A DNA stretch of 63,340 nucleotides, filler included, from Salisapilia sapeloensis CBS 127946 (Eukaryota; Protista; Oomycota), in NCBI GenBank assembly GCA_023334545.1. It is 18 parts of 18 records of this genome, joined end to end, with 100 filler letters (N's around TTAATTAATTAA, not from the genome) between each part and the next. Parts side by side here need not be neighbours in the genome. Positions count along the whole stretch, not along the records: positions 19,189 to 20,684 come from JAADVB010001126.1; 17 more parts are not named here. The stretch is one strand, 5' to 3'. Position 1 is the stretch's first letter; every line of letters starts with the position of its first letter. The position numbers and the translations under genes were made by a program. The notes under the pieces are model-generated. The model had not been told where the DNA came from. It made no database searches and was given only the letters and a program-made list of their open reading frames with translations. Of this stretch, positions 3,281 through 20,784 are shown piece after piece.

Positions 3281-3380
3281 NNNNNNNNNNNNNNNNNNNN
3301 NNNNNNNNNNNNNNNNNNNNNNNNTTAATTAATTAANNNNNNNNNNNNNNNNNNNNNNNNNNNNNNNNNNNNNNNNNNNN

Positions 3381-3495
3381 CAAAGCTCACGATCGGGTCG
3401 GCGCGTTCGACGACGAGGTTGTTGAAGCAGTCGAAGCGGAACATGGCGTGTGTGGTAGCGGCGAGGAGAGAGAGGACCGTCACGAGAAGCTTCAT
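3381..3495 (-). CDS. DUF1996 secreted protein, N-terminal fragment (copy A), truncated at linker
   Basis: MKLLVTVLSLLAATTHAMFRFDCFNNLVVERADPIVSF is a signal peptide plus the RxDPIV start of DUF1996. It is a paralog of 4238-5854. Confidence 0.85.
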
Positions 3496-3521
3496 GGCTC
3501 TAGCAAAACTTGACGAATGAA
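3381..3521. repeat. 141-bp perfect inverted repeat, partner at 8425-8565
   Basis: Base-by-base reverse-complement identity between the two ends of the contig. Confidence 0.97.
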
Positions 3522-4237
3522 AGTTGGCTGTATGGCCCGTTTGAATTAAGCTTGTTGATTTTATCGCAGGGTAACTTGGAAGGCATGGGTGATGTTTGAC
3601 TATATTCGTAATCGTATCAGTGCGAGTACAGCTACGCGTACTAGGATGAAAATATCCGTAGGTGTTTGCACGTTCGTACAGGTGGTAAAAAGCGTTACAC
3701 CGGTGCGTGCTGGAAAATAGAAGTGAGAAGGCTTTGAAAAGCGCTTTTCCTTGCACATCGAAAGTTTACTTTTTAAAATATATTCTTTGTATGATAGAAT
3801 AAGCAGAAGCTTTCTGTTGGCACAAACAATTGCTGTGAATGGTCGAACCGTGGGTAGAACTTGAGCTTGGCTGTACTCAGTTGAGGTATTCGCAGCTTCT
3901 AGATAGTATTTCTGTGTTTTGGCGTGCATCTATTGCCACCCAACATTGGTTCAAACTCAAATTCAATCAGGATGGTAGTAGCATAGCTTACATTAGCTTT
4001 GGACCCACGTCAAACCTTCCCATTAAAGTCGAACGACTATGTACTTTTAATAGCGTGCACAAACATCGATCAAGGAGACAGTAAGGAAGCAACATCATTT
4101 GAAAACTAACTGTCAGCAACATTTTAAATCAAAGCATCACATGAATTTTCTTGAAATTGAGCTTCTTCACTTATATGCATCGCGAGTTTGAAATACTTCG
4201 CACCCTTCATGCGCGAAGATGTTCTACTTTCGTAGTC

Positions 4238-19088: not shown

Positions 19089-19338
19089 NNNNNNNNNNNN
19101 NNNNNNNNNNNNNNNNNNNNNNNNNNNNNNNNTTAATTAATTAANNNNNNNNNNNNNNNNNNNNNNNNNNNNNNNNNNNNNNNNNNNNCATCTTAGTATG
19201 GAAAGGTCTAACGACCATTCATGTTCCTTGTACCTTTGTATTTGCATCACATGTTCCAATACAAGGACCCACTTCAAGATCCGGAATGTTACCCCAGCTT
19301 GGGATACATTCATGTAACTTCCCGTTACAACACCATGT

Positions 19339-20565
19339 TTATGGTAAATGCCCGATTTGATCGATATTATTAAATGTTAACTGTGGCTGATCCGGATTGT
19401 TTTGGTTGGGATGATAGTACTCTTCTCGCTTGAACTCCTTGAACTGTACGACGTACTTGATCTCAATGTCCACATTGCACACCGTATTGTAATAATCATC
19501 TGATCCAAACAAAGGATCCTTGTACAAATAGAACCGCAGTCGTTCGCGATACTCTGGTGCTTCACCCGTCTTGGTCCATATCTTACGTCGTTCATCAAAC
19601 TCTGGATGCGTCTTTGCACTAAATGGTTTAATTTGACGCTTAATCGTCATACTGTTGCCTTCTCCGTTTGGGTGTGCTTTAACTTTATCCCAAATGATAT
19701 CTCTGTATTGTAGAGCATCCTTAAGATGCGTATTGTCATGTAGCGCGTAACGCAGTGTGCCGTCTGTACCTGATGTGACTCCATAGAGATGCGTTCCCAC
19801 CATGATATCGTTGCCTACTCTGTTGCTCTGGTTTTGAAATCGAATGGTAACTTCGCAGCCAAGCGTCGTGTAGAACTTGTATAGGTCTTTGCAATGTTCA
19901 TATCCTCCATAATTGTAGCGTATCCACTCTTGGTCTGAGGGAGCTGCACATGGACCTACTCCGCTCAATTCGACATAACCGTCTCCTGATGAAGAGTAGT
20001 GATTTGTGTGCTTGATTAAATTCGTAAAGTTGCTCAGTGATGCAACTGGCCAGTCTGGATCATTCGTTTGAATACAAAACGATTTAGCTTCGTCGTAGTT
20101 CATGCCACTGATTCCTGCTTGTAGTCTCATTGGAAAGACCATTGTACGTGTTCTCGGTAGCCACGCGGTGTCCGGTTCATGTATGGTGATTTCCGTTTCT
20201 TTGGAGATGGTGTCAATTCCCTTGCTTGCCATGGGGTCGTCTGCTACCATGATGCTGTCTTCTGCAGCTTCTTGCTGTAATAACTCTGCGGGCTGTACGT
20301 GTCCGGGCTCGTAATCGCCTGTACGGAGGTGTTTATTGGATTGTGGTGAGATGTCTGGATGTTCCTTCCTCTTGTTCGACTTATGCGGGGTAGCCTGCAA
20401 ATCTTGAAATGAAGCAGTCTTGCCTTTAGCTTCTTCTTCACCTTTGCCGAATAGTGCTTCATAGCCGTGTTCCAGTTGGCCAACGTCTTCTTTATACTTT
20501 TCATAGGCCTGTTGATAAGATAGCCCTTCGCGTAGTAGTTCTACAATACGAGGTATCCACGACAT
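19339..20565 (-). CDS. ssDNA-virus-like capsid protein (parvo-like-hybrid/CRESS type), intact 408 aa
   Basis: Intronless ORF filling most of a 1.5-kb contig. It has a basic N-arm (KSNKRKEHP) and the motifs SKETEI, YKFYTTLGCEVTI, KIWTKTGEAP and NVDIEIKYVVQFKEF. From memory these resemble the KETPIS / YYTVLGCEY / KTWT / DLKYIVQFKDL motifs of PHV/NIH-CQV-like capsids. Not database-verified. Confidence 0.75.
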   Translation of the reverse strand: MSWIPRIVELLREGLSYQQAYEKYKEDVGQLEHGYEALFGKGEEEAKGKTASFQDLQATPHKSNKRKEHPDISPQSNKHLRTGDYEPGHVQPAELLQQEAAEDSIMVADDPMASKGIDTISKETEITIHEPDTAWLPRTRTMVFPMRLQAGISGMNYDEAKSFCIQTNDPDWPVASLSNFTNLIKHTNHYSSSGDGYVELSGVGPCAAPSDQEWIRYNYGGYEHCKDLYKFYTTLGCEVTIRFQNQSNRVGNDIMVGTHLYGVTSGTDGTLRYALHDNTHLKDALQYRDIIWDKVKAHPNGEGNSMTIKRQIKPFSAKTHPEFDERRKIWTKTGEAPEYRERLRFYLYKDPLFGSDDYYNTVCNVDIEIKYVVQFKEFKREEYYHPNQNNPDQPQLTFNNIDQIGHLP

Positions 20566-20784
20566 CTAGCAAATTGAAAAATGATGGATTTAAAGGTTAT
20601 AGTAAAGATCTTTGATGCGCTGCTGATAGTACTCTGGACTACGTATTGGTTCTCCAGTGGGGCAGTCACGGCAGTAGTCCCAGCNNNNNNNNNNNNNNNN
20701 NNNNNNNNNNNNNNNNNNNNNNNNNNNNTTAATTAATTAANNNNNNNNNNNNNNNNNNNNNNNNNNNNNNNNNNNNNNNNNNNN

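What the first reader, a model, noticed from the sequence alone, without database searches (positions are those of the whole stretch)
19189..20684. Intact ssDNA-virus-like capsid gene filling a whole contig in an oomycete assembly
Seen: a 408-aa intronless, stop-free ORF covers about 82% of a 1496-bp contig, has no host-like domain, and carries a basic N-arm plus YKFYTTLGCEVTI, KIWTKTGEAP and NVDIEIKYVVQFKEF. Recalled, not verified here: these motifs resemble capsids of parvo-like-hybrid (PHV/NIH-CQV-type) CRESS-DNA viruses, which are mostly known from metagenomes and reagent contamination. Inference: this is a young or co-opted endogenous viral element, or a virus infecting this organism, and either would link that virus lineage to an oomycete host. 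Most other foreign DNA in the window is decayed, so the intact frame stands out.
Basis: partly seen in the sequence, partly recalled or inferred. Interest (0 to 1): 0.85.

Follow-up and report, generated by a model that had tools for sequence, protein, structure and literature searches.

The report
Oomyvirid capsid gene on short contig
The contig is a piece of the genome of a small single-stranded DNA virus of the family Oomyviridae (the former "parvo-like hybrid viruses"), with a complete capsid gene behind an oomycete-type promoter. The family's link to oomycetes is already published, so this is a new divergent member, not a new kind of thing.

Summary
The 408-aa ORF is real: minus strand, 19339-20565, 82% of the 1496-nt piece. 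No Pfam or PDB sequence hit. The AlphaFold model shows a single jelly-roll. Its best structural matches are capsids of viruses that ICTV classified in 2025 as Oomyviridae (ex PHV/NIH-CQV).

Upstream lie the last 30 codons of a Rep, identical in protein to the Rep of a 4.1-kb metagenomic genome (L001). L001's capsid is the only close relative (51% identity). This capsid pair is an outlier within the family, while L001's Rep is ordinary for it.

The 24-nt Rep-Cap spacer holds an exact match to the published 16-nt oomycete INR+FPR core promoter, ending 3 nt before the ATG. The same motif sits just upstream of start codons in relatives (10 matches against 0.1 expected).

The "basic N-arm" is not: the N-terminus is acidic. 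The oomycete link is already in the literature.

The piece has no recognisable host flank, so free virus, recent integration and silica-column carry-over cannot be separated. I favour true association with the oomycete (about 0.6) over reagent carry-over (about 0.3). Verdict: new member of a known kind, moderate interest.

The parts
20590..20684 (-). 3' end of the Rep gene (HUH endonuclease + SF3 helicase type), cut off by the edge of the piece: 30 codons plus the stop codon
   Evidence: Translation. It is identical in protein to the C-end of the 390-aa Rep of L001, with 2 synonymous and 0 non-synonymous differences in 93 nt. It keeps all invariant and near-invariant tail residues of 35 aligned Reps.
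20566..20589 (-). 24-nt Rep-Cap intergenic spacer
   Evidence: Same length as in L001 and 87.5% identical to it.
20569..20584 (-). Exact match to the 16-nt oomycete core promoter supramotif INR (YCAYTYY) + 2 nt + FPR (MWTTTNC), ending 3 nt before the capsid ATG
   Evidence: the DNA search: 1 match, 0.01 expected. Motif definition from PMC3599244. Same motif at the same place in L001, L002 and L004, and upstream of Rep or the small ORF in other relatives.
19339..20565 (-). Complete capsid gene, 408 aa, no stops or frameshifts
   Evidence: Homologues. Model and fold matches. Purifying selection against L001: omega 0.17-0.29.
20428..20559 (-). Capsid residues 3-46: predicted helical hairpin, shared only with L001. 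It occupies the place where some relatives carry a PLA2 domain.
   Evidence: AF2 helices 3-12 and 17-46, block pLDDT 74-94. Alignment with P0001. No PLA2 by Pfam or motif.
20203..20427 (-). Capsid residues 47-121: predicted disordered linker with one short basic, NLS-like patch (residues 56-82)
   Evidence: pLDDT below 50; charge counts.
19396..20202 (-). Capsid residues 122-390: single jelly-roll core with one low-confidence loop (residues 181-212)
   Evidence: Strands 139-378 in the model; most 10-residue blocks from residue 221 on have mean pLDDT above 85. Foldseek matches to circovirus and oomyvirid capsids.
20244..20504 (-). Overlapping +1-frame ORF of 86 aa, very basic (19 K/R, 1 D/E), starting at capsid codon 21; status uncertain
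   Evidence: Also present in L001 (72 aa), absent in L002-L004. dN/dS does not discriminate between the two frames.
19189..19338 (-). 150 nt downstream of the capsid stop, unassigned: no recognisable counterpart of the small ORF3 that follows the capsid gene in relatives
   Evidence: No nucleotide or translated similarity to L001-L004. An ORF3 profile from 7 loci finds nothing in any frame. No long palindrome.

Best explanation
The piece is a 1.5-kb fragment of the genome of a member of the family Oomyviridae (order Lineavirales, phylum Cressdnaviricota). These are the linear ssDNA viruses formerly called parvo-like hybrid viruses (PHV/NIH-CQV). The fragment carries the end of Rep, a 24-nt spacer containing an oomycete-type INR+FPR core promoter, and an intact capsid gene. 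Shown: the protein is predicted to fold as a single jelly-roll, and it belongs to the oomyvirid capsid family as a deep outlier lineage. Its only close relative sits in a Rep-Cap genome of 4.1 kb, and the gene has evolved under purifying selection. Inferred: transcription starts at the INR adenine about 17 nt before the ATG, using the host's TFIID-type machinery. Sixty copies of the protein build a T=1 shell around a 3.3-4.1 kb linear ssDNA. That DNA is replicated by the HUH/SF3 Rep from terminal inverted repeats. The acidic N-terminal helical hairpin and linker replace the PLA2 domain of some relatives. Least certain: I think the DNA is truly associated with the sequenced oomycete, either as free viral DNA (about 0.35) or as a very recent integration (about 0.25), and is not kit-borne.
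For: Identity: the BFVD fold search puts capsids of Lactuca and Forsythia parvo-like viruses and of Pavo, Luscinia, Cygnus and Grus parvo-like hybrid viruses first (E 1e-23 to 1e-17). Several of these virus names are exemplars of ICTV species in Nicoomyvirus, Avoomyvirus and Swoomyvirus. There are 221 sequence relatives at E<=1e-3. Every relative whose contig was looked up sits on a contig of 4.2 kb or less, and all 8 distinct near-complete relative genomes examined have the order small ORF(-)/Rep/Cap(/ORF3). Rep: the tail is identical to L001's Rep. That Rep is 57-65% identical to the 119 other best-listed of 1055 matching Reps. Its helicase matches AAV Rep40/68 (6e-6), and its best viral fold hit is a bird-associated 'parvoviridae sp.' Rep at 50% identity, followed by CRESS Reps. 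Function: 0 breaks in 408 codons; omega 0.17-0.29. Host signature: exact INR+FPR 3 nt before the ATG. Across 8 related sequences there are 10 exact matches against 0.105 expected, and 9 of them lie 1-37 nt upstream of a start codon in sense orientation. The motif is reported in oomycetes and not in a diatom, Arabidopsis or yeast (PMC3599244). Linear genome: terminal inverted repeats of 30 nt in L002 and 121 nt in L003. Association: oomycete genomes are reported to carry Rep and capsid EVEs and transcripts of this family (PMC13499601). No identical or near-identical copy was found in other datasets.
Against: No host sequence is recognisable on the piece, and it is cut inside Rep. That is what a low-coverage foreign molecule looks like. 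PHV DNA is a documented contaminant of silica columns and was found in most of 29 kits tested (PMC13141889). Every family member would carry the same oomycete-type promoter, so the motif does not show that THIS oomycete is the source. Uniqueness is weak evidence, because most Rep clusters in the family are seen on one contig only. The ORF3 that follows the capsid gene in 7 of 7 relatives with enough sequence is not recognisable here. I could not verify that the assembly is an oomycete's.
Confidence: 0.6

Rival explanations
1. Reagent or environmental carry-over: the contig derives from oomyvirid DNA bound to the silica membrane of the extraction column (or from wash water), not from the sequenced organism, and was assembled from a few reads.
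For: PHV sequences were recovered from silica membranes of most of 29 commercial kits and are interspersed with 'host-associated' PHVs in the tree (PMC13141889). The original NIH-CQV/PHV was traced to spin columns (PMC4279886). One Rep cluster of the family occurs on 129 contigs (P0241). The contig is short, covers part of a genome only, is cut inside Rep and has no host flank.
Against: No identical or near-identical protein or contig was found in the collections searched. The capsid is an outlier: its best match outside its pair is 88-90 bits, while the family median is 336 and the minimum 144. High-biomass genomic preparations dilute column contaminants strongly (general reasoning, not tested). 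Oomycetes are the predicted natural hosts.
Confidence: 0.3
2. Older endogenous viral element whose capsid gene has been co-opted (domesticated) by the oomycete and is kept intact by host-level selection.
For: The frame is intact with omega below 1. An oomycete-type promoter lies directly upstream. No recognisable ORF3 follows the capsid gene, so the viral gene order may end there. EVEs of this family are reported in oomycetes.
Against: The Rep tail is still present in its viral position and identical in protein to a free-genome relative, with dS of only 0.13. The spacer has the viral length. The promoter is a family trait of the viruses, not a host acquisition. There is no host flank and no intron. 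The omega value mostly reflects divergence between viral lineages.
Confidence: 0.05
3. A cellular (host or bacterial) gene, or a chance ORF, that only looks viral.
For: No Pfam domain and no PDB sequence hit for the protein itself.
Against: ORF length is far beyond the shuffles. There are 221 homologues, and every one whose contig was looked up lies on a small virus-like contig. A jelly-roll is predicted with high confidence, and named viral capsids are the best matches. A Rep tail lies upstream.
Confidence: 0.01

Closest known systems
Oomyviridae (Lineavirales; genera Nicoomyvirus, Avoomyvirus, Swoomyvirus), formerly parvo-like hybrid virus / NIH-CQV
   Same: Capsid fold and family. The Rep type is the same. 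Relatives are small linear genomes with terminal inverted repeats. Predicted hosts are oomycetes.
   Different: Capsid sequence is only 24-37% identical to the 149 other listed representatives and is an outlier by score. It has no PLA2 motif, and its N-terminal helical hairpin is shared only with L001. No recognisable ORF3 follows the capsid gene. Only a third of a genome is present.
L001: metagenomic contig Ga0611985_0018204 (JGI 3300068286, 4138 nt)
   Same: The only close relative. Rep tail is identical in protein; spacer has the same length and the same INR+FPR; the first ~70 capsid codons are 90-95% identical in DNA; capsid is 51% identical overall.
   Different: Beyond about capsid codon 70, DNA identity falls abruptly to about 61% or less and synonymous sites are saturated. 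L001 has an ORF3; the window shows none.
Circoviridae capsid proteins (PCV2, bat circovirus, BFDV)
   Same: Best solved-structure matches to the jelly-roll core (E 4e-7 to 7e-5, TM 0.44-0.57 on the target).
   Different: About 10% sequence identity. No arginine-rich N-terminal arm. The protein is twice as long. Genes are on the same strand and relatives are linear, whereas circoviruses have a circular ambisense genome.
Parvoviridae VP proteins
   Same: The group got its historical name from a PLA2-bearing capsid (PMC13426907). A parvoviral-type PLA2 domain or motif is present in 8 of 70 (Pfam) and 17 of 152 (motif) family members. Relatives are linear with terminal repeats.
   Different: No Parvo_coat or PLA2 hit for this ORF. 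No parvovirus among the 50 best PDB fold matches. ICTV places the family in Cressdnaviricota, not Parvoviridae.
[quoted passage not shown]
   Same: Rep and capsid genes of this virus family in oomycete assemblies (PMC13499601).
   Different: Those are described as chromosomal. Here no host junction is visible and I could not compare sequences, because no oomycete genomes are reachable with these tools.

Membership tests
Oomyviridae (ex parvo-like hybrid viruses) | Capsid protein homologous to those of classified members | tested here: met
   Foldseek against BFVD: Forsythia suspensa parvo-like virus and Pavo, Luscinia, Cygnus and Grus parvo-like hybrid virus capsids at E 2e-22 to 9e-18. These virus names are ICTV exemplars in all three genera. 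phmmer finds 221 relatives.
Oomyviridae (ex parvo-like hybrid viruses) | Family-type Rep (HUH endonuclease + SF3 helicase) upstream on the same strand | tested here: inconclusive
   Only 30 codons are on the piece. They are identical to L001's Rep and keep all conserved tail residues. L001's Rep is 57-65% identical to the best-listed of 1055 matching Reps and has invariant HUH histidines and Walker A/B residues. The rest of the window's Rep is unseen.
Oomyviridae (ex parvo-like hybrid viruses) | Linear ssDNA genome with inverted terminal repeats | not testable with these tools
   The piece lacks genome ends. Relatives L002 (30 nt, 100%) and L003 (121 nt, 96%) have terminal inverted repeats.
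Oomyviridae (ex parvo-like hybrid viruses) | Gene order small ORF(-) / Rep / Cap / ORF3 | tested here: inconclusive
   Rep then Cap with a 24-nt spacer is met. ORF3 is present in 7 of 7 relatives with enough sequence but is not recognisable in the 150-nt tail.
Oomyviridae (ex parvo-like hybrid viruses) | PLA2 domain in the capsid N-terminus (historical hallmark, not universal) | tested here: not met
   No Pfam hit and no xGxG...HDxxY motif. However, only 8 of 70 (Pfam) and 17 of 152 (motif) family members have it, so it does not define the family.
Parvoviridae VP | Sequence or profile similarity to parvoviral coat proteins | tested here: not met
   No Parvo_coat hit for the ORF or any of 70 relatives. 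No PDB sequence or profile hit. No parvovirus in the top 50 fold matches.
Circoviridae capsid | Jelly-roll core plus arginine-rich N-terminal arm; circular ambisense genome | tested here: not met
   Fold similarity is met. But the N-terminus is acidic, there is no Circo_capsid hit for the ORF, the genes are on the same strand and relatives are linear.
Endogenous viral element | Host-virus junction on the contig | tested here: inconclusive
   Everything from the Rep tail to the capsid stop is viral. The 150-nt tail matches neither relatives nor anything I can search. No oomycete genomes are available here.
Endogenous viral element | Decay of reading frames | tested here: not met
   Capsid gene: 0 stops and 0 frameshifts in 408 codons. 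Rep tail: 0 amino-acid changes against L001.
Reagent (spin-column) contaminant | Same or near-identical sequence recurring in unrelated datasets or blanks | tested here: not met
   No exact record. The only hit above 37% identity is L001 at 51%. Nothing in the IMG/VR or JGI scans. This is a weak test, because most family members are singletons. Blanks and read depth are not available.
Oomycete INR+FPR core promoter | 16-nt YCAYTYY-NN-MWTTTNC in sense orientation close upstream of the start codon | tested here: met
   Exact match at 20569-20584 (-), 3 nt before the ATG, with 0.01 expected. It recurs at start codons in relatives. Use as a promoter was not tested.

The most novel reading that the evidence does not exclude
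The contig comes from an oomyvirid that is replicating in the sequenced oomycete isolate. That would be the first member of the family tied to a culturable host. It would carry a capsid lineage far from all others, and its genes would be read from oomycete INR+FPR promoters. This would settle the twelve-year diatom, oomycete or reagent argument about where PHV/NIH-CQV sequences come from.
Probability: 0.3. Interest if true: 0.75.

Novelty: new member of a known kind. Interest (0 to 1): 0.45.

Why it matters
PHV/NIH-CQV sequences have misled pathogen discovery since 2013, and they are still argued over. A 2026 letter calls them reagent artefacts, while ICTV in 2025 named the family after oomycetes on the strength of EVEs. 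No oomyvirid has been linked to a living host. An intact, selected capsid gene in an oomycete assembly is a candidate for that link.

The oomycete-specific INR+FPR promoter in front of the viral genes is host evidence independent of EVEs. It favours oomycetes over diatoms. It would also let metagenomic PHV contigs be read as DNA of oomycete viruses carried over in reagents.

On its own, however, the finding adds one divergent, partial genome to a family of more than a thousand known variants.

Tried and rejected
- Pfam and PHROGs on the ORF gave nothing useful.
- PDB sequence and profile searches returned only chance hits.
- The word-indexed homologue search with the 70-sequence profile returned only 2 proteins and no names.
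- Three cluster look-ups gave no informative source names (only 'hypothetical protein' and one evidently unrelated label) and only short contigs.
- Scans of IMG/VR and JGI metagenome contigs with the ORF and with the window+P0001 alignment found no relative.
- Sample identifiers of the relatives are not mentioned in the held papers, so their environments are unknown.
- Key papers are not held: Naccache 2013, and the Naccache and Zhi 2014 PNAS letters.
- Rfam found nothing on the piece.
- Repeat search and folding of the 150-nt tail showed no terminal hairpin. The fold is only moderately better than shuffles, z -3.2.
- The ORF3 profile against the tail was negative in every frame.
- dN/dS could not tell whether the overlapping basic ORF is coding.
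- Rejected: a chance ORF, a cellular gene, membership of Parvoviridae or Circoviridae, and a circular genome.

1. One search printed plain three-frame translations of the tail, in which stops can be seen. In my working I briefly weighed whether an ORF3-like start was interrupted. Because the profile test finds no ORF3 remnant, I do not class it as a broken gene.
2. I first recalled the oomycete promoter consensus from memory. Every search used only the pattern printed in PMC3599244.
Full report
**1. Observation**

The piece 19189-20684 carries one long ORF on the minus strand, 19339-20565. It is 408 aa and covers 82% of the 1496 nt. In 1000 shuffles the longest ORF averaged 75 aa and never exceeded 219 aa. 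Pfam finds no domain, PHROGs nothing meaningful, and a sequence search of the PDB only chance hits.

One detail is wrong. The N-terminal 121 residues are acidic (pI 5.05; 14 K/R against 22 D/E). Only residues 56-82 form a short basic patch.

**2. What flanks the ORF**

Upstream on the same strand, a reading frame runs in from the edge of the piece and ends 24 nt before the capsid ATG. Its 30 residues are identical to the C-terminus of a 390-aa protein on contig L001. L001 is a 4138-nt JGI metagenome contig that also encodes the only close homologue of the ORF: P0001, 411 aa, 51% identical over the full length.

That 390-aa protein is a Rep. Alignment with 34 relatives shows invariant HUH histidines, Walker A and B residues and motif C. 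Its profile matches the SF3 helicase of AAV Rep40/68 (E 6e-6). Its model matches a bird-associated 'parvoviridae sp.' replication protein at 50% identity, and then CRESS-DNA Reps.

The 150 nt downstream of the capsid stop match nothing.

**3. What the protein is**

An exhaustive HMMER search found 221 relatives at E<=1e-3. All but P0001 are 24-37% identical. Every relative whose contig was looked up sits on a contig of 0.6-4.2 kb.

With an alignment of 70 of them, AlphaFold gives a model of mean pLDDT 72:
- residues 3-46: a confident N-terminal helical hairpin;
- residues 47-121: a disordered linker;
- residues about 139-378: an eight-stranded jelly-roll; most blocks from residue 221 on have mean pLDDT above 85, and one loop (181-212) is poorly predicted.

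Against the PDB, the best matches are circovirus capsids (PCV2, bat circovirus, BFDV), followed by other single jelly-roll capsids. No parvovirus appears in the top 50.

Against predicted viral structures, the first ten matches are eight capsids of 'parvo-like' or 'parvo-like hybrid' viruses (Lactuca, Forsythia, Pavo, Luscinia, Cygnus, Grus, Accipiter, Phoenicopterus), one 'Parvoviridae sp.' capsid and one unnamed entry (E 1e-23 to 9e-16). Ordinary CRESS capsids follow at about 1e-14.

**4. What that virus group is now called**

The group was ratified by ICTV in March 2025 as family Oomyviridae, order Lineavirales, class Arfiviricetes, phylum Cressdnaviricota. It has three genera and 38 species, linear ssDNA genomes, and 'likely hosts' in the Stramenopiles (PMC12451638). 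Forsythia suspensa parvo-like virus and the Pavo, Grus, Luscinia and Cygnus viruses among my fold hits share their names with exemplars in Nicoomyvirus, Avoomyvirus and Swoomyvirus.

According to PMC13499601, the host prediction rests on two things. [quoted passage not shown] Second, transcripts in Plasmopara halstedii and A. invadans. No oomyvirid has been isolated.

An oomycete origin was already proposed in 2014, against a diatom hypothesis (PMC4279886). A 2026 letter still argues that PHV sequences in metagenomes are silica-membrane artefacts (PMC13141889).

**5. Anatomy of the family, from relatives**

Eight distinct contigs of 3.2-4.1 kb (L001-L005, L008-L010) share one gene order: a small minus-strand ORF, a Rep of about 390 aa, a capsid of 407-468 aa and, where sequence remains, a 74-94-aa ORF3 starting at or just after the capsid stop. 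L002 has perfect 30-nt inverted terminal repeats. L003 has 121-nt repeats (96%) plus a terminal palindrome. These are linear genomes with hairpin-capable ends.

A parvoviral PLA2 domain or motif is present in 8 of 70 capsids by Pfam and 17 of 152 by motif. It is absent from the window ORF and from P0001.

**6. How this member differs**

In an all-against-all comparison of 152 capsids, the median best non-self score is 336 bits and the minimum 144. The window ORF and P0001 reach only 88-90 bits outside their own pair. L001's Rep, by contrast, is 57-65% identical to the 119 other best-listed of 1055 matching Reps. So an outlier capsid is attached to an ordinary oomyvirid Rep.

Between the window and L001, DNA identity changes sharply along the sequence:

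| Region | DNA identity |
|---|---|
| Rep tail | 97.9% |
| Rep-Cap spacer | 87.5% |
| First ~180 nt of the capsid gene | 90-95% |
| Beyond that | about 61% or undetectable |

Synonymous divergence is 0.13 in the Rep tail, 0.33 in capsid codons 1-70, and saturated (about 3) in the jelly-roll part. I read this as a recombination boundary near the start of the capsid gene. Nucleotide-level constraint around the promoter, or from an overlapping ORF, is an alternative.

Selection is purifying throughout: omega is 0.17-0.29, and the Rep tail has 0 non-synonymous against 2 synonymous changes.

**7. A host signature I did not expect**

Start codons in these genomes are preceded by a T-rich motif. The published oomycete core promoter consists of INR (YCAYTYY), a 2-nt spacer and FPR (MWTTTNC). 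This INR+FPR supramotif is found in Phytophthora, Hyaloperonospora, Pythium and Saprolegnia. It is not found in the diatom Thalassiosira, in Arabidopsis or in yeast (PMC3599244).

The pattern has one exact match in the window, at 20569-20584 on the minus strand. It ends 3 nt before the capsid ATG, and 0.01 matches are expected by chance.

In eight non-redundant sequences (26.6 kb) there are 10 exact matches, against 0.105 in shuffles and a maximum of 2 in 200 shuffles. Nine of the ten lie 1-37 nt upstream of a start codon in sense orientation:
- capsid gene: window, L001, L002, L004;
- Rep: twice in L005;
- small ORF: L004, L005, L008.

Four one-mismatch copies sit in front of Rep in L001, L003 and L004 and of the small ORF in L010. 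I found no mention of this in the papers I could read.

This supports oomycetes over diatoms as hosts of the family. It also suggests how the capsid gene is expressed: initiation at the INR adenine about 17 nt before the ATG. That last step is inference.

**8. Where the DNA came from**

The piece cannot settle this.

In favour of true association with the organism:
- Oomycetes are the predicted hosts and carry EVEs and transcripts of the family.
- No identical or near-identical sequence turned up elsewhere.
- A high-biomass preparation dilutes column contaminants (reasoning, not tested).

In favour of carry-over:
- The documented ubiquity of PHV DNA in kits.
- The shortness of the contig, its break inside Rep and the lack of any host flank.
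- Singletons are the rule in this family, so uniqueness says little.

Against an old or co-opted EVE:
- The Rep tail is intact and still in its viral place.
- The spacer has the viral length.
- The promoter is a trait of the viruses themselves.

The missing ORF3 is unexplained. The tail could be a divergent viral 3' region or a host flank.

My split is: free viral DNA of the isolate 0.35, recent integration 0.25, reagent or environmental carry-over 0.30, co-opted EVE 0.05, other 0.05.

**9. Verdict**

The identification as a PHV-type capsid is supported, and the group now has a proper name. The oomycete link is already known. This is a new, divergent and partial member of a known family, of moderate interest.

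The most useful by-product is the INR+FPR signature.

Two slips are declared under 'tried and rejected'.

Noticed in passing
window 20569-20584 (-); L001 2538-2553; L002 1820-1835; L004 518-533(-) and 1914-1929; L005 302-317(-), 476-491 and 512-527; L008 677-692(-): Exact matches to the published 16-nt oomycete INR+FPR core promoter sit 1-37 nt upstream of viral start codons. There are 10 matches against 0.105 expected. I did not find this mentioned for the family in the papers held here.
   Followed up: yes
window 20250-20684 against L001 2438-2870: DNA identity to L001 drops sharply from 88-98% (Rep tail, spacer, first ~180 nt of the capsid gene) to about 61% or less. Synonymous divergence goes from 0.13-0.33 to saturated. 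This looks like a recombination boundary near the start of the capsid gene.
   Followed up: partly
window 20244-20504 (-); L001 2618-2836: An overlapping +1-frame ORF starts at capsid codon 21. It is 86 aa in the window and 72 aa in L001, and is extremely basic (19 K/R, 1 D/E). It is absent in L002-L004. dN/dS does not say whether it is coding.
   Followed up: partly
L001 3803-4087; L002 3062-3295; L003 3132-3356; L005 3018-3287; L008 3507-3752; L009 2838-3083; L010 3058-3327; window 19189-19338: A small ORF3 (74-94 aa, with similar starts and basic ends) follows the capsid gene in 7 of 7 relatives with enough sequence. The window's 150-nt tail has no recognisable counterpart in any frame.
   Followed up: partly
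L002 1-30 / 3302-3331; L003 1-121 / 3352-3472 and 3417-3542: Inverted terminal repeats and a terminal palindrome at contig ends of relatives. These indicate linear genomes with hairpin-capable termini.
   Followed up: yes
capsid family (P0001-P0151): The parvoviral-type PLA2 motif, the historical reason for the 'parvo-like' name, is present in only 17 of 152 capsids. No parvovirus capsid is among the 50 best PDB fold matches, which are led by circovirus capsids.
   Followed up: partly
L001 115-906 (-): L001 is larger (4138 nt) than the other genomes (3.2-3.9 kb). Its minus-strand ORF is 213-263 aa, against 100-145 aa in relatives, and is rich in charged, coiled-coil-like sequence.
   Followed up: no
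Rep cluster P0241: One Rep sequence of the family occurs on 129 contigs of public sequencing runs, while most clusters are singletons. It is a candidate for a widespread kit contaminant lineage.
   Followed up: no
window 19189-19338 (-): The unassigned tail folds somewhat better than shuffles as ssDNA (-22.2 kcal/mol, z -3.2) but has no long palindrome.
   Followed up: no
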